NCBI GenBank assembly: GCA_976226885.1
Contig: OZ320315.1
Span: forward strand, 67,146,001 to 67,210,000
Origin: Iphione sp. A-MEVVRFRX5
Taxonomy: Eukaryota
DNA: 64,000 nt
Reading direction: 5' to 3'
In this document: piece after piece, positions 7,409-58,696 of the stretch
Numbering within the stretch: the first letter of the stretch is position 1
Layout: every line of letters begins with the position of its first letter
Position numbers and translations under genes: made by a program
Notes under the pieces: model-generated
Told to the model about the DNA's origin: nothing
The model's input: only the letters and a program-made list of their open reading frames with translations
Database searches by the model: none

Positions 7409-8700
7409 TATCCGGCAGGGTGGAAGATTGCCAGGGTGTGTCCGATATACAAAAAGGGAGCCAGGGGTGACCCGGGCAATTACAGGCTGGTTAGCATCCT
7501 GCCCCTGCCTGGCAAAGTGTAAGAGCGCTGGTTTTGAAGTGAGATAATCAAGGAACTCGAGGGTAGAGGGGCAGTGTCGATCAAACAGCATGGGTTCCAC
7601 AAGGGACATGGCACTGACACAGCGGTAAGTAGTCTGGTGTGCAGGACTTGGGAGAAACTCAATATGGGTCAGGATGACAGTTAGTAGGGGGGGGGATACT
7701 GCAACAATTCAAGGTCCTGGGAGGTGGGGAAAAAGTGCTAAGAATATTACGAAGCTATTTATCAGACAGATGGCAATTTGTGGAGTGTGAGAGAGAACCA
7801 TCAAAGATTAGGCAGGTGAATCTTGGAGTACTCCTGTCTTTGGACCCTTGGGATTCATGCTGATTGTCAATACCATAGAGCGAGTGCTACCAGCTGGAGT
7901 TAGTGCGGTCCTCTATGCAGATGATGTAACACTACTAGCGAGTGCTACTGACTTACTGAAGCTGTGAGGCCTTTGCCAGTGTGCTCTTGGTAGTGTAGAA
8001 GGGTTGTGTGGGAAGCAAGGACTAAGACTTTGTGCAGACAAGTGCATGCACATGGTAATGGGCAAAGGACTGGGTCTGGATCTAGACTTACATTTGAAAG
8101 GGGGGAGGCTGAGGGCAGTAGAGAACTGTAACTTACTGGGGTACAAGTAAGCTGCAAAACTAGCAATAAAGGGTGCAATGAAGGGTGTAATGGGGAAGAT
8201 GTGGGGCATGTCACTCAAGCTGTCAAGGGTAAAAAGGAAGTTACCATTGCAAGTAAGACTTTTGGTGTTTAGGTGCCTGGTGTTGACCCATATGATCTAC
8301 CTGGCAGGTTTTCTCTTTGGTGTGGCTGGGTCAGACATCATAAGGCTACAGGTCATGGTACACAGATGTGTGCATGTGGCTGTGATGACCAACATGAAGC
8401 AAAGCACACTAAGCTTCCAGGAGCACATGGGCCTACCCAGAATTTGGAGACTCATAGGTCAACGGGGGCTTATGCTGATCCACAGACTGATGCAACTGAA
8501 ACTGTTGCCGAGTTGTGCAAAGACTAGTGTGAGAGCAGGTAACAAAAAGTCAGGGAAACTATTTAAACCTCGAACAAGCAGGTACAAGGCGTCCCTGAGA
8601 CACAGTGGTCTACTTATGTGGAACATGCTGCCTGAGGAGATAAAGACTAGGCCTAGGTGACCTTGTGGGGCATGGGAGATATGGCTCAAGGACACTTGAA
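7409..8700 (+). mobile_element. Decayed CR1/L2-like LINE RT fragment
   Basis: YPAGWKIARVCPIYKKGARGDPGNYRLVSILPLPGKV*...QHGFHKGHGTDTA from 7409; VSAVLYADD at 7911-7925; C-terminal RLLVFRCLVLTHMIY...RHSGLLMWNMLP (8178-8660). Multiple stops and frameshifts. Confidence 0.9.
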
Positions 8701-53020: not shown

Positions 53021-53299
53021 GCTTAGAAGGACTAGGTGGTATTGATCTTTATTTTGAGCGCATGCTTGCAGATTGTACGTGCTTTAAAGCCTAATAGTCC
53101 TTTGACAGCTCAATGCAAAATAATAAAATGTACTAAAGATGGTTTTAGGAGTACGAATACTTTACAGACTGTCAGGTTTATGACGGGGGTTTCCATGCAT
53201 ACATGTCAGAGCCCTTACTAAGTCACTTGTACCACAGAGTGTACCAGTGTTTGCTTTCATGTAAATGAAAAATCGAGGCGTCCAGACGTGTTCTCTTAA

Positions 53300-54957
53300 G
53301 TGAGTGATTACTTATGTCAAAATAACCAAATATGACAAGATCAAAAGCACTGAAACAGACGGAAAAGGATAAAAAACAACCAAAAAAGGGAACCGAACCA
53401 AAAAATGGAGAGAATGACGATGATCTACTACTAACAGAGGAATTTTCAAAGGCAAATTTGAATCAAACGGCCCTATCGGACAAGGATACCGAGCGGGATC
53501 ACCGAACATCGCCCAAACCAGCGGGAGGACGCGACAACAGTGACCGTTGTTTGACCGTCATGGACCGCACGGTCCAAGAACTCATTGACCACAATACAGC
53601 AGCCCTAAAACTACACACAGCGGCTTTGAACAACATTCTACAAACAGAACAACAGGTACTGGATGAGCTAAAGGGACTTCGAGACGATTACCAAAAGAAC
53701 AGAAAAGTAAGTGAAAGTCTGATTGAAAAATTGTCCAGGGAAAATAATCTCCTCAAGGAGCAACTAGACTCAGCAATGGCGCGAATCAAAACACTTGAAA
53801 ATTCAAGAATCGCTCCACGAGAAAATCAACCTGAACTAAACCCAGGTGATGATCACAACAATGAAATCAGAGGGGGAGCTGTTGATGAACTATCAGAGGA
53901 GGTTAATGACAAAAGGTGGAACCTCGTCGCCCATGGTATCCCGGAGGATAAAGCCCTTGACTTGTACAGGGAGGTACGTTCCCTACTGAGCTACTTAGAC
54001 CCAACAATTGAGGAAGAGGACATATTCAATATTGAACGTATTGGCATGTTCAAGGAAGGCAGGGAACGATCAATACTCATTGGATTCAATGCCTCTCAGG
54101 TACGTGACACAATTTATCGCAGAAGATTCAAATTAAAATCAAGTACCAACTATCAAGGAGTCTATCTCCGTGAAGATATTCCTCAGAGTTGCCGACAAAT
54201 CTATCAAAATCTACAAAATATTGCTGCTCTAGGAAGGAAAAATGGCATGAAAGCAAGTGTGAGTGGACTAACTCTACGAATTAATGGTCACTCGTACAAA
54301 CACACCGAGTTAGATCAGCTACCGAAGGGATTATCCCTCGAGGCCGCAAACATTCAAGAAACCGACGACTTGGTGGCATTTCGCGGAGCAAGCTGTAAAC
54401 TGTCTATGACGTATCCCACAGAAGTAGAATACGAGGGGGTAATGTATTCTAGCTGCGAACATGCGTTTCAATCAACTAAGGCCCACGTGTGTGAGGACGA
54501 ATCAGCTGTTGAAAATCTGAAGGGCATTTCAAATGGTCTCGTGGCCAGACGTGTCGGAAACGTCGTTACTCGCACAGCAAAGTGGAACAAAAAGGAGAGT
54601 TCTACACTCTATGAAATTCTCAAACTGAAATTTGGAAAAGAGGAGTTCAAAGAGACTCTGCTTGCTACAGACGATAAGGACCTTGTAGAAGTAAGTACTG
54701 ACTCAATAATGGGCAGTGGTTGCCATCTATACGATGATCGACTTCACAATGGTCAATACCCCGGAAAGAATCTTGTTGGGATGGCCCTTATGTGGTTACG
54801 TGCTGAGCTCCGAGAATCCCATTAAATCTGTATGGGATTGACTAAAACTATCTCTGACACTTGTGTATCATCATTTACATGCTTGTCATATTGAAAAGGT
54901 TCTAATCTGCTACCATAGATAAAAAAATAGTTAACATTTCATTTCGGTCATTTACAG
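53300..54957 (+). promoter_or_regulatory. Candidate intron spanning all of ORF1 (donor GTGAGT at 53300; branch-like TTAAC at 54931; acceptor TTTACAG at 54957)
   Basis: The donor lies 32 nt upstream of the ORF1 ATG. The pyrimidine tract + CAG ends 2 nt before the middle-ORF ATG. Sequence motifs only, no transcript evidence. Confidence 0.4.
53332..54825 (+). CDS. LINE ORF1 protein: coiled coil + RRM + CTD fused to a C-terminal NADAR (YbiA/DUF1768-like) domain
   Basis: Heptad-like region at aa ~80-158. ORF1-type RRM at aa ~194-272 (KRWNLVAHGIPED...IERIG...RSILIGF...RDTIYRRRFKLK). CTD follows (GVYLREDIP...LRINGHSY). aa ~347-495 match the NADAR pattern: AFRG..KLS..YP..VEYEGVMYSSCEHAFQSTKA...ARRVG...KW...LYEILKLKF...FKETLLAT.DKDLVE.S.D..(M)GSG...GKNLVGMALMWLRAEL. 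Confidence 0.88.
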   Translation: MTRSKALKQTEKDKKQPKKGTEPKNGENDDDLLLTEEFSKANLNQTALSDKDTERDHRTSPKPAGGRDNSDRCLTVMDRTVQELIDHNTAALKLHTAALNNILQTEQQVLDELKGLRDDYQKNRKVSESLIEKLSRENNLLKEQLDSAMARIKTLENSRIAPRENQPELNPGDDHNNEIRGGAVDELSEEVNDKRWNLVAHGIPEDKALDLYREVRSLLSYLDPTIEEEDIFNIERIGMFKEGRERSILIGFNASQVRDTIYRRRFKLKSSTNYQGVYLREDIPQSCRQIYQNLQNIAALGRKNGMKASVSGLTLRINGHSYKHTELDQLPKGLSLEAANIQETDDLVAFRGASCKLSMTYPTEVEYEGVMYSSCEHAFQSTKAHVCEDESAVENLKGISNGLVARRVGNVVTRTAKWNKKESSTLYEILKLKFGKEEFKETLLATDDKDLVEVSTDSIMGSGCHLYDDRLHNGQYPGKNLVGMALMWLRAELRESH

Positions 54958-54959
54958 AA

Positions 54960-55559
54960 ATGAATCCTTTGGTCAGGTATGTGGCGGACGAAACTGGCGT
55001 GGAATTAGCCTATCACCTACAGGAAACCTATGGTGACAGGATACTAATATCGTCTCACATATACCCTGGCCTAACGCCTGAATATCTTGCATCACACATT
55101 GCTACATTTCCTGACGGCCCATTCAGCTTCACGGTGGTGCGCCTAGGGCTGCACTCCTACGCCAGGGATGAGGAAGGTCACTGGAGATCCAGATGTACTG
55201 ACGACGACACAAGCCTCGAGGCAAGTGTCCCATCAACTCTGACGTCGATCAGCAATCATCTCAATGCAATGGGACACTCTGTTATTTACCTACCGATTAA
55301 TGGAGTATCCTTGCTGACCACTGATCATGCTGAACAAGACCTGTTGAACGCCCAAATTTGCCATTTTAACCTGGCGGTTGAAGAGGTCAATCTATTAGGA
55401 GGCCACACAACACCTGATACAGCCTGGCCGCTGCATGACTTTTCTGATGGTGATATCATATTTCGCCCCGAAGAATTAATTGGGGGTGTCAGAGTCAAGC
55501 ATCACATAGCATACAATTGGGCTTGTAATGTAGGCGATTACCTCCTCAGACTGCTATAA
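54960..55559 (+). CDS. Middle ORF, 199 aa, probable SGNH/GDSL esterase-like fold with degenerate catalytic residues
   Basis: Alternating beta/alpha pattern aligns by eye with the SGNH blocks: VRYVADETG (block I, GDS->ADE), SHIYPG (block II), TVVRLGLHS (block III, GxND->GLHS), SVIYLPI, helix LLNAQICHFNLAVEEVN, and ELIGGVRV...AYNWA (block V, DGxH->GGVR). Esterase domains are established in CR1/L2 ORF1 proteins. Confidence 0.6.
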   Translation: MNPLVRYVADETGVELAYHLQETYGDRILISSHIYPGLTPEYLASHIATFPDGPFSFTVVRLGLHSYARDEEGHWRSRCTDDDTSLEASVPSTLTSISNHLNAMGHSVIYLPINGVSLLTTDHAEQDLLNAQICHFNLAVEEVNLLGGHTTPDTAWPLHDFSDGDIIFRPEELIGGVRVKHHIAYNWACNVGDYLLRLL

Positions 55560-55648
55560 TTCAATTCCCCTACTTGGGAATCATTACATTCCTCTTAACC
55601 TTCTTCCACCATTATTACCTAATCTGTTAAATCTGAAGTCCTATTATA

Positions 55649-58429
55649 ATGAAGGGTCGTGGTATCATATTTTGGAATATCAGAAGCATTGTACCTAAAA
55701 TCGATGAAGTAAGGTCACTATTAGACAACCTTAGACCTTATATCTGTTGTATCACTGAAACTTGGTTATCTCCGACTATGACTAACGACATATTAAACCA
55801 TGATGATTATACTTTAATTCGACAAGATAGAGTATCCCCAGTAAAAAAACGAGGTGGAGGTATACTTGTATATGTTAAGAAGACTGAGGCTGTCACAGAA
55901 TGCCAAGACCTATCCTGCAATTCGGATAGTAGTGAATCAATCAGTCTTTTACTCCGTTCTCAACACCGTAAACCACTAGGGGTCACCGTTGTCTATTCCC
56001 CGCCATCTGGTAACAAGACTGAGTTAATAAAATATCTGGAAAATAACACTGCTGCATTGAAACGGAAGGGGGCTAAAGACATCGTTATAGGGGGTGATAT
56101 GAACATTGACTGGGCAAGAAAAAATCCAAATTCTATCAATCTTGATAAAGTCTGTTCTAAATTTGGATTGAAGCAATATATTAATGACCCGACAATAATT
56201 CATGAATCTAGCAAGTCAATTATTGATCTAATTTTCACTAATATGCTGAACATTAGTGAGAATGGGACAATTGATATCAATGTTAGTGATCATAAGCCGG
56301 TCTTTATACTGAATAAGAAAATCAGAGAAAGAAAAAAGAAAAATTCTTACATAGGTAGGGACTGGAGTAAGTACGACAAGAGTGCCTTACGAGACCATCT
56401 GCAACCAATAATTAATTATCATGAAAGCAATACGAACCCCTCAATTGATGACAAGTGGAATACTCTGTGTAGTGCCATTTTAGGGGCGGTTAAGGTCTTG
56501 TGTCCTAACAAAGCTAAAACTAGAAAGTCTGGTACTGATTGGATGACACCGGAACTTCTCGATGCAATTCGCAATCGTGATTATTTCCTAAAAAAGTACA
56601 CTTCAACCCAAAATATTGACGACCTTAGAATTTCAAAATTTTACAAATCAAAGGCCAAAAAACTTACCAAGCTAGCGAAACGAGAGTATTACAGAAGAAT
56701 ATTAGGAAATTGCACGACTGCGAAGGACTACTGGTCCTGTATAAACTCCTCCGTCCTAAACAAGGGTAAAGGTGCGTCTAAAATCAACCTGGTGGAAAAT
56801 GATGTAAGTCAATCAGATAGAGACACTCCAAATATCTTTAATGCCATGTTTGTCTCCCAGGCTCAAAATTTGTGTCATGACATCAATCTACCACACTTGG
56901 AATGGGATCCAAAATGGGACCTCATACCTGTAACTCATCAGTCTCTTGTAAAAAAGCTACTTCAGATCAAAACCAAAAAACCAAGTGGCATTGATGATGT
57001 TCCAACTACTGTACTTAAGGATGCTCTTCTAATAACCTCTGAATTGTTCCTCAATATTGTGAATGAAATAATTATGACAGGTAACTTCCCAGACACTTGG
57101 AAAATCGCAAGAATAACCCCGCTTCATAAAAAGGGATCAAAGGCAAAAAAGGAGAACTTCAGACCAATTGCTATACTTCCCCTGGTTGGTAAGTTAGTCG
57201 AAGCCGTTGTCCATGAACAGATGGTTAATTATCTTGAGAACAGTAAATTCTATTGTCGTGAGCAGCATGGCTTTCGACGCCAAAGAGGAACAAGCACTGC
57301 GTTCGCGGTATTTTTAAGAGACATTTACTCAGCAATTGACGAGGACAAATACGTGGCCAGTATCCTATTCGATTACTCTAAAGCCTTCGACGTTATCAAC
57401 CACGAACTGATACTACACTGTCTGAGACGATCCGGCATGGGTCCGAGAGCCTTAAGCTGGGCTTCTTCTTACCTAGAAGGTAGAAGCCAATTTGTCCGAT
57501 GTAATCAGGTAAACTCATCACTCCTGAAGGTTGAGCAGGGTGTTCCTCAAGGGAGCCTAATGGGCCCCTTAATGTTCTCTATTGTTATTAATTCCCTTCC
57601 CAGCTCGTTGTCTATAGCAAGTGCAGTTCTCTATGCTGATGATTTAACAATTACCTGCGTAGCGGCTAATGCACTAACACTGAGACTCAAGCTTCAACGT
57701 ACTATCAGGGATGTACATACTTGGTCACAGGCTAATGGCCTAACATTGAATACTGAGAAAACCCAGTACCTGTCGTTTGGTAGAGCCAACCAATTTGACC
57801 TTGACCTATCCATTGAAAATAAACAGATATCAAGGGTGACAAATTGCAAACTCCTAGGTTATGTGGTGGATGACAAATTGTCCTGGAGGCCAATGGTAGC
57901 TCAAACTAAACGAATAATCAGACAACGATCCACTGGTCTCTCCAAGCTTGTAAAATTTGTTCCTTTCAAGGATAGGCTAAGACTCTACCATGCATTTGTA
58001 TTGCCTTGTCTTGATTATGGACTCCCATTTGTTGTGAATGCGAGTAAATGCCTCGTTGATGATCTGCAAGTAGAAATGAACCGTGCGAGCAAATCTGTCC
58101 TCCTAGGCAGTACTAAATCCATGATGTCTGCCAGTAACCTACGTGGAAAGTCACGTCTTGATACAGTCAATGATAGAGGTAATAAGCAGCTGATCATGCT
58201 GATTCACAGGCTTCAGTGCATTACCGAATGTAAGATAAGATCACATCCAAAACACCTAAGAAGAAGTAGCCTTGGCAATATGCAATTAAAACAGCCTAAG
58301 AAGAGCCTGTTTCAAAATTCATTCTGGTATAGAGGGATAGCTGCTTGGAATAAGCTACCCTATCCAAGTAAGTCTAAACTGTCGGTGCGAGAATTCAGAA
58401 GAATTGTATATAGATGTTATCAGCCATAA
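55649..58429 (+). CDS. LINE ORF2: apurinic-like endonuclease + reverse transcriptase (926 aa, intact)
   Basis: APE motifs WNIRS, ITETWL, VVYSPP, GGDMNID, IIDLIFTN, SDHKPV. RT motifs FRPIAILP, QHGFR, FDYSKAFDVINH, GVPQGSLMGPLMF, LYADD, KLLGYVVD. C-terminal LYHAFVLPCLDYG and RGIAAWNKLP are typical of CR1/L2-like elements. No C-terminal CCHC seen. Confidence 0.97.
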   Translation: MKGRGIIFWNIRSIVPKIDEVRSLLDNLRPYICCITETWLSPTMTNDILNHDDYTLIRQDRVSPVKKRGGGILVYVKKTEAVTECQDLSCNSDSSESISLLLRSQHRKPLGVTVVYSPPSGNKTELIKYLENNTAALKRKGAKDIVIGGDMNIDWARKNPNSINLDKVCSKFGLKQYINDPTIIHESSKSIIDLIFTNMLNISENGTIDINVSDHKPVFILNKKIRERKKKNSYIGRDWSKYDKSALRDHLQPIINYHESNTNPSIDDKWNTLCSAILGAVKVLCPNKAKTRKSGTDWMTPELLDAIRNRDYFLKKYTSTQNIDDLRISKFYKSKAKKLTKLAKREYYRRILGNCTTAKDYWSCINSSVLNKGKGASKINLVENDVSQSDRDTPNIFNAMFVSQAQNLCHDINLPHLEWDPKWDLIPVTHQSLVKKLLQIKTKKPSGIDDVPTTVLKDALLITSELFLNIVNEIIMTGNFPDTWKIARITPLHKKGSKAKKENFRPIAILPLVGKLVEAVVHEQMVNYLENSKFYCREQHGFRRQRGTSTAFAVFLRDIYSAIDEDKYVASILFDYSKAFDVINHELILHCLRRSGMGPRALSWASSYLEGRSQFVRCNQVNSSLLKVEQGVPQGSLMGPLMFSIVINSLPSSLSIASAVLYADDLTITCVAANALTLRLKLQRTIRDVHTWSQANGLTLNTEKTQYLSFGRANQFDLDLSIENKQISRVTNCKLLGYVVDDKLSWRPMVAQTKRIIRQRSTGLSKLVKFVPFKDRLRLYHAFVLPCLDYGLPFVVNASKCLVDDLQVEMNRASKSVLLGSTKSMMSASNLRGKSRLDTVNDRGNKQLIMLIHRLQCITECKIRSHPKHLRRSSLGNMQLKQPKKSLFQNSFWYRGIAAWNKLPYPSKSKLSVREFRRIVYRCYQP

Positions 58430-58664
58430 ATGTGCTAATCACAAATTGCCCTGTACTGTGTAAATAGTGTACATAATCATGTATCTTACCTCTGTTTCGT
58501 TTCAAAGTCTAGAATTAGCCTTAATACGTACTTCACTTATGCCCAAATTATTCAATTTTTCATTCTTTTTTCTTATTTACTTTCCATTATTGCTCTTATT
58601 TTTTCCACCCTCTTGTATTCACGGGAATATCTCGATGTATTTCGCAGAATTGCATTGAGCAGTG

Positions 58665-58696
58665 AATAAATCAGATTTCAATTTCAATTTCAATTT
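58665..58696 (+). repeat. LINE 3' terminus: AATAAA plus (ATTTCA)3 tail
   Basis: gAATAAAtcagATTTCAATTTCAATTTCAATTT read directly; short tandem-repeat tails are characteristic of L2/CR1 elements. Confidence 0.85.

What the first reader, a model, noticed from the sequence alone, without database searches (positions are those of the whole stretch)
54370..54825. LINE ORF1 nucleic-acid chaperone fused to a NADAR (ADP-ribosylhydrolase/N-glycosidase) domain
Seen in sequence: ORF1 reads coiled coil, RRM, CTD and then ~150 aa carrying the NADAR hallmarks (SCEHAFQSTKA, LKLKF, LLAT, LVE.S.D, GKNLVG..LM.LR). Established: LINE ORF1 accessory modules usually listed are PHD, CCHC knuckles, RRM and SGNH esterase, and I do not recall NADAR among them. 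NADARs include E. coli YbiA and the antitoxins that remove ADP-ribose from guanine in DNA (DarT1-NADAR). Some animals have guanine-specific DNA ADP-ribosyltransferases (butterfly pierisins, clam CARP-1), and some RNA viruses carry NADAR or macrodomains. Inference: the retrotransposon may package an ADP-ribose eraser into its RNP to counter ADP-ribosylation of its RNA, cDNA or target site, i.e. a mobile-element counter-defence system.
Basis: partly seen in the sequence, partly recalled or inferred. Interest (0 to 1): 0.92.

Follow-up and report, generated by a model that had tools for sequence, protein, structure and literature searches.

The report
LINE ORF1 protein carrying NADAR domain
A full-length jumping gene (LINE retrotransposon) in this invertebrate genome has a NADAR enzyme domain, the kind that strips ADP-ribose off DNA and RNA bases, fused to the end of its RNA-packaging protein. 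The fusion is real, old and kept by selection, but a 2025 paper already noted it in passing and its function is untested.

Summary
Window 53285-58696 (+) is a full-length 5.4-kb LINE with three intact ORFs. ORF1 (497 aa) has a coiled coil, an L1-type RRM and CTD, and a C-terminal YbiA-family NADAR domain (Pfam E 8e-21). The alignment-based AlphaFold model has pLDDT 94.7 and matches Phytophthora NADAR, E. coli YbiA and human L1 ORF1p.

The genome holds at least 150 scored copies (3444 candidates), down to 35% identity. All 50 loci examined keep the order ORF1-NADAR, ~200-aa SGNH-like ORF, APE-RT. NADAR dN/dS is about 0.09, like the RRM and CTD. Both catalytic glutamates (E376, E453) are kept in nearly every copy and in all 31 external homologues. 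The same fusion is common in other public assemblies.

The novelty claim is weakened. PMC12477816 (2025) already mentions NADAR domains in ORF1 of oyster LINEs held in Repbase, and this scan has noted the family many times elsewhere in this genome.

The counter-defence idea is plausible but unsupported. No pierisin/Scabin-like or DarT-like transferase was found in the genome.

I rate this a new member of a barely described kind, of moderate interest.

The parts
53285..58696 (+). Full-length LINE element, 5412 bp
   Evidence: blastn against four full-length copies (78-84% identity) starts at 53285 and ends at 58695/58696 in every case. All copies begin with the same GACGTGT... 5' end and finish in a short tandem repeat.
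53285..53331 (+). Short 5' UTR (47 nt)
   Evidence: Lies between the shared 5' end and the ORF1 ATG.
53332..54825 (+). ORF1, 497 aa: disordered basic N-terminus, coiled coil, RRM, CTD, NADAR
   Evidence: ORF list, Pfam, models, Foldseek.
53533..53808 (+). Coiled-coil region (about residues 68-159)
   Evidence: One continuous helix, pLDDT 86-90, in the single-sequence AlphaFold model. dN/dS 0.105.
53902..54366 (+). L1-type RRM plus CTD (about residues 191-345)
   Evidence: Profile match to human L1 ORF1p 2ykp/2yko (E 5e-4), 2ldy and 2w7a. Foldseek 2ykp E 1.3e-5 over 145 columns. dN/dS 0.05-0.08.
54367..54822 (+). YbiA-family NADAR domain (residues 346-497). Predicted catalytic E376 and E453; ADP-ribose-contacting K383, R406 and W418.
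   Evidence: Pfam PF08719 E 8e-21. Foldseek 8bau and 2b3w. Residues mapped through the 8bau alignment onto the residues described in PMC11543638. Conservation counts. dN/dS 0.086.
54960..55559 (+). Middle ORF, 199 aa, SGNH/GDSL-esterase-like without a conserved nucleophile serine
   Evidence: No Pfam or NCBIfam hit. ESM-Atlas feature neighbours include GDSL lipase clusters at 0.94. An intact ~200-aa ORF is present in 48 of 49 other loci. In the alignment D10, G13, G63, N137 and N144 are invariant, but the residue after D10 varies.
55649..58429 (+). ORF2, 926 aa: APE endonuclease (residues 9-218) and reverse transcriptase (residues 494-739). The C-terminal domain has no conserved Cys/His knuckle.
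   Evidence: Pfam PF03372, PF14529 and PF00078. C-terminal alignment of 16 ORF2s.
58430..58696 (+). 3' UTR with AATAAA (58665-58670) and an (ATTTCA)n tail (58675-58696)
   Evidence: Sequence. The last ~60 nt and the 5-6-nt tandem-repeat tail are shared by four other copies.

Best explanation
Shown: this is an autonomous, full-length non-LTR retrotransposon of a large, old, three-ORF lineage. Its ORF1 protein is an L1-type nucleic-acid-binding protein (coiled coil, RRM, CTD). A YbiA-family NADAR domain is permanently fused to its C-terminus. That domain is under purifying selection as strong as on the RRM and CTD, and it keeps both catalytic glutamates.

Inferred: ORF1p multimerises through its coiled coil and coats the element's RNA in cis. 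This places several NADAR active sites on the RNP. There the domain works as a glycohydrolase that removes ADP-ribose from nucleobases (guanine, possibly cytosine) of the LINE RNA, the nascent cDNA or the target DNA. Such adducts would block translation, reverse transcription or second-strand synthesis, so the element carries its own eraser. This parallels the NADAR antitoxin of DarT1 and the orphan NADAR of T4-like phages. The source of the adducts (host, symbiont or environmental transferase) is unknown.
For: Domain identity and fold.

Active site: PMC11543638 gives E43 and E125 as the ribose-coordinating and catalytic residues of P. nicotianae NADAR, and K50, K75, W89 as ADP-ribose contacts. 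Their equivalents are conserved as follows across 29 own and 31 external sequences: E376 in 60/60, E453 in 59/60, K383 in 54/60, R/K406 in 58/60, W418 in 59/60. In 20 further genomic copies E376 is kept in 19/20 and E453 in 20/20.

Selection: dN/dS is 0.086 for NADAR, against 0.39-0.47 for the N-terminus and linker. At deep divergence NADAR identity (38-45%) is as high as RT identity (32-49%).

Linkage: the order ORF1N-NADAR-middle ORF-APE(-RT) holds in 30/30 and 20/20 loci and in other assemblies. A search starting from the RT finds an element whose upstream ORF carries NADAR.

Abundance: 150 scored matches out of 3444 candidates. In the 1.84-billion-protein library 849 proteins match at E <= 1e-10, and the top 150 almost all span RRM-CTD plus NADAR.

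Enzymology of the family: every NADAR tested removes ADP-ribose from guanosine in DNA and RNA, and some also from cytidine, including a sponge protein (PMC11125620; PMC11833690; PMC12945103). Phage NADARs act as counter-defence (PMC11825919, abstract).
Against: No biochemical or expression data exist; no sequencing run could be listed. No Scabin/pierisin-like, Enterotoxin_a-like or DarT-like transferase was detected in the genome. Only one ecto-ART-like frame (PF01129) was found, so no source of base ADP-ribosylation is known.

Several ADP-ribose-contacting residues of P. nicotianae NADAR are changed in this genome's lineage: R79 to N/D/S, R93 to E, W133 to Y/L/M, D130 to D/H. The substrate may therefore differ.

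Earlier notes of this scan report sister lineages with dead but conserved NADAR domains (not re-tested here). If true, that would point to a non-catalytic contribution.
Confidence: 0.45

Rival explanations
1. RNA-end or NAD-metabolite processing. The NADAR acts on the element's own RNA in a housekeeping step, for example by removing a NAD-derived or ADP-ribose-derived group linked to the 5' end or cap, or an RNA-repair by-product. This is what has been proposed for NADARs of RNA viruses. It would not be erasing a defence mark.
For: Structure neighbours in the ESM Atlas include RNA-virus RdRP-NADAR polyproteins and giant-virus mRNA capping enzyme (guanine-N7 methyltransferase)-NADAR fusions (rows 5 and 7). 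[quoted passage not shown] Changed substrate-contact residues allow a different substrate.
Against: The NADARs tested were inactive on 5'- and 3'-phosphate-linked ADP-ribose on RNA and DNA (PMC11833690). No NADAR has been shown to act on caps. The idea is as untested as the main one.
Confidence: 0.22
2. Non-catalytic reader or binding module. The NADAR fold serves to bind ADP-ribose, poly(ADP-ribose) or nucleic acid. That could, for example, steer the RNP to PARP-marked DNA breaks that can prime reverse transcription, or simply extend the nucleic-acid-binding surface of ORF1p.
For: The model has pTM 0.85 for RRM-CTD-NADAR as one compact unit. Earlier scan notes describe sister lineages whose NADAR has lost catalytic residues yet stays conserved (not re-tested). 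Several ligand-contact residues differ from characterised enzymes.
Against: Both catalytic glutamates are kept in 48/49 own copies each, and in 31/31 external homologues. That is hard to explain without catalysis.
Confidence: 0.15
3. Small-molecule N-glycosidase like E. coli YbiA (clearing reactive riboflavin-pathway intermediates), or another metabolite-directed activity that benefits the host cell or the element indirectly.
For: It belongs to the YbiA family. TIGR02464 (riboflavin-intermediate N-glycosidase) scores 72.3 bits, just below its 73.7 cut-off.
Against: A metabolic damage-control enzyme has no evident reason to be fused to a cis-acting RNA-coating protein in thousands of selfish elements. 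E. coli YbiA itself also removes ADP-ribose from guanosine in vitro.
Confidence: 0.05
4. Not a LINE feature: a host NADAR gene captured by chance next to one LINE copy, or a chance or annotation artefact.
For: None found.
Against: The same in-frame fusion and gene order occur in all 50 loci examined on many chromosomes and in other assemblies. The element boundaries enclose the domain.
Confidence: 0.01

Closest known systems
Repbase 'Tx1' LINE families of Crassostrea gigas with YbiA-family NADAR in ORF1 (noted in PMC12477816, Genome Biol 2025)
   Same: A LINE ORF1 protein carries a YbiA-family NADAR domain in a lophotrochozoan. The function is unknown; the authors suggest RNA processing.
   Different: That paper gives one sentence and a supplementary figure, with no copy census, selection test, structure or active-site analysis. 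The oyster elements are labelled Tx1. The element here has a 5-6-nt tandem-repeat tail, a separate SGNH-like ORF and no C-terminal Cys/His knuckle in ORF2, which from memory fits CR1/L2-type elements better. I could not obtain the Repbase sequences, so whether the two are the same lineage is unresolved.
Ectocarpus Gypsy LTR retrotransposons with NADAR at the N-terminus of Pol (PMC12477816)
   Same: A retrotransposon has recruited a YbiA-family NADAR.
   Different: Different element class (LTR), different fusion partner (Pol, not the RNA-binding protein), and probably an independent acquisition from bacteria.
Phytophthora nicotianae NADAR (PDB 8bau) and E. coli YbiA (PDB 2b3w)
   Same: Best structural and sequence matches: 30% and 26% identity, TM by target 0.68-0.70. 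They share both catalytic glutamates, including the YbiA-family glutamate in the last strand.
   Different: Those are stand-alone enzymes, whereas here the domain is the C-terminal module of a LINE ORF1p. The equivalents of R79, R93 and W133 are changed in this genome's lineage.
DarT1-NADAR (DarTG1) antitoxins and orphan NADARs of T4-like phages
   Same: This is the functional analogy proposed here: a mobile or selfish genome carries a NADAR that erases guanine ADP-ribosylation of its nucleic acid.
   Different: DarT1-linked NADARs belong to the BC4488 family, with aspartate in the last strand and an N-terminal DNA-binding extension. Phage NADARs have histidine there. This domain has glutamate. 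No DarT was found in the genome.
Human/mouse L1 ORF1p (PDB 2ykp, 2yko, 2ldy, 2w7a)
   Same: Coiled coil, RRM and CTD in the same order, with a structural match over about 145 columns.
   Different: Pfam Transposase_22 is not matched. L1 ORF1p ends after the CTD, whereas here about 150 aa of NADAR follow it.
CR1/L2-type LINEs whose ORF1 carries an SGNH esterase (e.g. zebrafish ZfL2-1; recalled from memory, not checked here)
   Same: An SGNH-like module upstream of APE-RT, a tandem-repeat 3' tail and a conserved 3' UTR end.
   Different: Here the esterase-like module is a separate ORF and lacks a conserved nucleophile serine. ORF1 is L1-like and carries NADAR.

Membership tests
NADAR superfamily (Pfam PF08719) | Profile match above the curated threshold | tested here: met
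   75.4 bits against a cut-off of 35.1, E 8e-21, profile positions 26-163 of 163.
NADAR superfamily (Pfam PF08719) | YbiA fold: helical core flanked by two small sheets (PMC11125620) | tested here: met
   In the model (pLDDT 94.7) the domain has helices flanked by short strands. Foldseek top hits are 8bau and 2b3w, probability 1.00, TM by target 0.68-0.70.
NADAR superfamily (Pfam PF08719) | First catalytic glutamate (P. nicotianae E43) and lysine K50 | tested here: met
   E376 in 60/60 and K383 in 54/60 of the aligned sequences. E376 in 19/20 and K383 in 20/20 further copies.
NADAR superfamily (Pfam PF08719) | Hydrolysis of N-glycosidic ADP-ribose-base bonds | not testable with these tools
   Needs an enzyme assay.
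YbiA family (as opposed to BC4488/DarT1-linked or phage NADARs) | Glutamate (not Asp or His) in the last beta strand (P. nicotianae E125) | tested here: met
   E453 in 59/60 and 20/20. The definition is taken from PMC11125620 and PMC11543638.
DarTG1-type toxin-antitoxin NADAR | Aspartate in the last strand and adjacency to a DarT gene | tested here: not met
   Glutamate at that position. No DarT (PF14487) match in the genome. The neighbours are LINE ORFs.
L1-type (coiled coil-RRM-CTD) ORF1p | Coiled coil followed by RRM and CTD folds | tested here: met
   Helix at residues 68-159. Foldseek 2ykp/2yko E about 1e-5 and 2w7a. Profile against L1 ORF1p E 5e-4.
L1-type (coiled coil-RRM-CTD) ORF1p | Pfam Transposase_22 (PF02994) match | tested here: not met
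   No hit at E <= 0.1. The similarity is visible only by profile and by structure.
Autonomous APE-type LINE | APE endonuclease plus RT in ORF2, defined 5' and 3' ends shared by copies | tested here: met
   PF03372, PF14529 and PF00078. Shared ends.
CR1/L2-like clade | Placement of the RT in a phylogeny with reference elements | not testable with these tools
   No Repbase or Dfam references are available. The indirect signs are a tandem-repeat tail, a conserved 3' UTR, an SGNH-like ORF and no Cys/His knuckle after the RT. The nearest named RT relatives are uncharacterised fly proteins.
Tx1 clade (label used for the oyster precedent) | RT phylogeny; C-terminal Cys/His knuckle in ORF2 (feature recalled from memory) | tested here: inconclusive
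   No conserved Cys/His motif after the RT in 16 ORF2s. Human L1 ORF2p (8c8j) is a weaker match (E 1.9e-9) than R2 proteins (E 2.6e-13). No phylogeny was possible.

The most novel reading that the evidence does not exclude
[quoted passage not shown] If so, much of what the ADP-ribosylation field calls 'animal NADARs' would be transposon ORF1 proteins.
Probability: 0.2. Interest if true: 0.9.

Novelty: new member of a known kind. Interest (0 to 1): 0.5.

Why it matters
NADARs are the only enzymes known to reverse guanine and cytosine ADP-ribosylation of DNA and RNA. The field states that the roles of animal NADARs are unknown, and the NADAR papers I searched never mention transposons.

This work shows that a large, selected, catalytically intact NADAR population in an animal genome sits on LINE ORF1 proteins. 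That gives a concrete and testable context: an RNA-coating protein that carries an eraser. It also warns that surveys of 'metazoan NADARs' may partly be counting transposons.

For transposon biology it adds a well-documented enzymatic accessory module to the ORF1 repertoire. That module recurs together with SGNH-like esterase modules, in this element as a separate ORF and elsewhere fused in one protein (row 10).

Tried and rejected
- Word-indexed protein searches with full ORF1 and with the NADAR domain alone returned nothing. These blanks are uninformative, because the exhaustive HMMER search found 3385 relatives.
- The single-sequence AlphaFold model was poor outside the coiled coil (mean pLDDT 44.7) and was replaced by the alignment-based model.
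- No sequencing run was listed for the element, so there is no expression evidence and read laying was not used.
- Cluster look-ups gave no names or taxa for 20 external homologues. The only taxon hints are ESM-Atlas clusters recorded as Annelida. The organism remains unidentified.
- None of the clade-assignment attempts for the RT was decisive: the RT homology search, PDB, the Atlas and Pfam on the ORF2 C-terminus.
- The search for host base-ADP-ribosyltransferases found no Enterotoxin_a, Scabin-like or DarT match. The control genomes did not ring either, so this is no proof of absence. One PF01129 ART-like frame was found and not followed up.
- The host-gene and chance-artefact readings were rejected on the copy census.
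- Complex prediction was not used; trimerisation is only inferred by analogy with L1 ORF1p.
Full report
**What is there.** The finding's coordinates (54370-54825) are the last 151 codons plus the stop of a 497-aa ORF at 53332-54825 on the + strand. It is followed by a 199-aa ORF (54960-55559) and a 926-aa ORF (55649-58429), each in a different frame. Pfam assigns residues 361-494 of ORF1 to NADAR (PF08719, E 8e-21, 75.4 bits against a cut-off of 35.1). It assigns ORF2 to the APE endonuclease families and to RVT_1. NCBIfam's YbiA-type model TIGR02464 scores 72.3 bits, just under its 73.7 cut-off. blastn against four full-length relatives fixes the element at 53285-58696, 5412 bp. All copies start with the same GACGTGT... 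end 47 nt before the ORF1 ATG. All end in AATAAA followed by a 5-6-nt tandem repeat, here (ATTTCA)n at 58675-58696.

**Fold.** A single-sequence model resolved only a long helix at residues 68-159, the coiled coil. I then aligned residues 183-497 with 28 intact copies from this genome and 31 external homologues (A2). The AlphaFold2 model from that alignment has mean pLDDT 94.7 and pTM 0.85. Foldseek against the PDB returns two kinds of match:
- For the C-terminal half: Phytophthora nicotianae NADAR with ADP-ribose (8bau, E 1.4e-9, TM by target 0.68) and E. coli YbiA (2b3w, TM 0.70).
- For the N-terminal half: the human L1 ORF1p trimer (2ykp/2yko, E about 1e-5, about 145 aligned columns) and its RRM (2w7a).

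The A2 profile gives the same picture by sequence: 8bau 2e-27, YbiA 2e-24, L1 ORF1p 5e-4.

**It is a property of the LINE lineage, not of one copy.** The NADAR segment alone finds 150 scored matches (3444 first-look candidates) across the 1.18-Gb genome, from 92% down to 35% identity. Most lie in open frames of roughly 450-600 aa.
- In the 30 best loci the order ORF1 N-part, NADAR, middle ORF, APE is always kept.
- In 20 deeply diverged loci (NADAR 38-45% identical) the order ORF1 N-part, NADAR, APE, RT is also always kept.
- An intact ~200-aa middle ORF is present in 48 of 49 loci.

Outside this genome, an exhaustive HMMER search of 1.84 billion representatives finds 3385 relatives, 849 of them at E <= 1e-10. 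The top 150 almost all match RRM-CTD and NADAR in one stretch at 24-33% identity. Three such proteins lie upstream of APE and RT ORFs on their contigs. In the reverse direction, one of the closest external relatives of this element's RT sits downstream of a 656-aa NADAR ORF. ESM-Atlas neighbours of ORF1 are 415-489-aa NADAR clusters whose few recorded members are annelids.

**Selection and active site.** Among seven close intact copies, dN/dS by region is as follows:

| Region | dN/dS |
|---|---|
| NADAR | 0.086 |
| RRM | 0.051 |
| CTD | 0.083 |
| Coiled coil | 0.105 |
| N-terminus | 0.39 |
| Linker | 0.47 |

dS is high (0.4-1.0), so the ratios are approximate.

PMC11543638 describes the P. 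nicotianae active site. E43 and E125 coordinate the distal ribose, and E125 is the YbiA-family signature residue. K50, K75, R79, W89, R93, D130 and W133 contact ADP-ribose. Through the 8bau alignments (chain numbering is +2) these residues map as follows over 29 own and 31 external sequences:

| P. nicotianae residue | Equivalent here | Conservation |
|---|---|---|
| E43 | E376 | 60/60 |
| K50 | K383 | 54/60 |
| K75 | R406 | K or R in 58/60 |
| W89 | W418 | 59/60 |
| E125 | E453 | 59/60 |

Twenty more genomic copies give E376 in 19/20 and E453 in 20/20. The equivalents of R79, R93, D130 and W133 are N/D/S, E, D/H and Y/L/M in this genome's lineage. External homologues keep K/R at the R93 position and W/F/Y at the W133 position. 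The catalytic core is thus intact, but substrate contacts have drifted.

**Mechanism.** The anatomy, the selection and the intact catalytic dyad are shown. The chemistry is inferred. Every NADAR assayed so far removes ADP-ribose from guanosine in DNA and RNA, and several also from cytidine, including a sponge enzyme. None acts on thymidine-linked or phosphate-end-linked ADP-ribose. Because ORF1p coats the LINE RNA in cis, the simplest reading is that the RNP carries a base de-ADP-ribosylase acting on its RNA, cDNA or target DNA. This is analogous to the DarT1 antitoxin and to orphan NADARs of T4-like phages.

The weak point is the missing writer. Six-frame searches of the genome found no Enterotoxin_a, Scabin-like (pierisin family) or DarT domains. 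The tool's control genomes did not ring either, so absence is not established. One PF01129 ecto-ART-like frame exists.

The rivals are:
- An RNA-end, cap or NAD-metabolite processing role. Structure neighbours include RdRP-NADAR polyproteins of RNA viruses and capping-enzyme-NADAR fusions of giant viruses.
- A non-catalytic ADP-ribose or nucleic-acid binding role.
- A YbiA-like small-molecule glycosidase role.

**Clade.** ORF1 is L1-like. ORF2 lacks any conserved Cys/His knuckle after the RT and has a conserved C-terminal motif ending in WN.LP. The 3' UTR end is conserved and is followed by a tandem-repeat tail. The middle ORF resembles SGNH/GDSL esterases by language-model features, although the serine that should follow the invariant aspartate is not conserved. 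From memory these traits fit CR1/L2-type elements. I could not run an RT phylogeny with reference elements, and searches did not decide it.

**Novelty.** A full-text search found one precedent. PMC12477816 (Genome Biology 2025) reports a YbiA-family NADAR at the N-terminus of Pol in one Ectocarpus Gypsy lineage. [quoted passage not shown] No paper holds both DUF1768 and 'retrotransposon', and in the NADAR plus non-LTR search the listed titles and abstracts showed no paper on a NADAR domain in a LINE. The two NADAR papers I searched for the word never mention transposons. This scan has also noted the family many times elsewhere in this genome.

**Verdict.** I class this as a new, well-documented member of a barely described kind, of moderate interest. 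It would become high interest if the enzyme assay and a writer enzyme are found.

Noticed in passing
window 54960-55559 (+): The middle ORF is kept as an intact, separate ~200-aa ORF in 48 of 49 other loci and resembles SGNH/GDSL esterases by Atlas features. The residue after the invariant Asp (where the nucleophile Ser should be) varies (E/N/T/R/S...), so it may be a pseudo-esterase.
   Followed up: partly
ESM Atlas cluster, row 10: An annelid-recorded cluster of 480-aa proteins combines NADAR (100% of members) with GDSL lipase (38%) and zf-CCHC (21%). NADAR and esterase modules therefore also occur fused in one LINE-type ORF1, which hints that the two modules work together.
   Followed up: no
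L049 (G000:C22:65011208-65018693): This copy's RT is 61% identical to the window's RT, but its NADAR is only 39% identical and its ORF1 N-part 33%. That suggests modular exchange (recombination) of ORF1 between lineages.
   Followed up: no
A2 alignment, ORF1 residues 422 and 460: The lineage in this genome has Glu where P. nicotianae NADAR has the ADP-ribose-contacting R93 and where external LINE homologues have K/R. It has Y/L/M where the others have W/F/Y (W133). This is a lineage-specific remodelling of the ligand pocket.
   Followed up: partly
window 7412-8171 (+): A fragmented RT-like stretch, 35-38% identical to this element's RT, split over three pieces. It is probably a decayed copy of a related LINE.
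   Followed up: no
L057 (G000:C22:19330202-19330666, -): The only ART-family (PF01129, ecto-ADP-ribosyltransferase type) match in the genome, E 6.7e-16, in a 308-aa open frame. Its substrate is unknown.
   Followed up: no
ESM Atlas clusters, rows 5 and 7: NADAR domains are fused to RdRP in Pisuviricota polyproteins and to the mRNA guanine-N7 methyltransferase capping enzyme in Nucleocytoviricota. These are useful comparators for an RNA-directed role.
   Followed up: no
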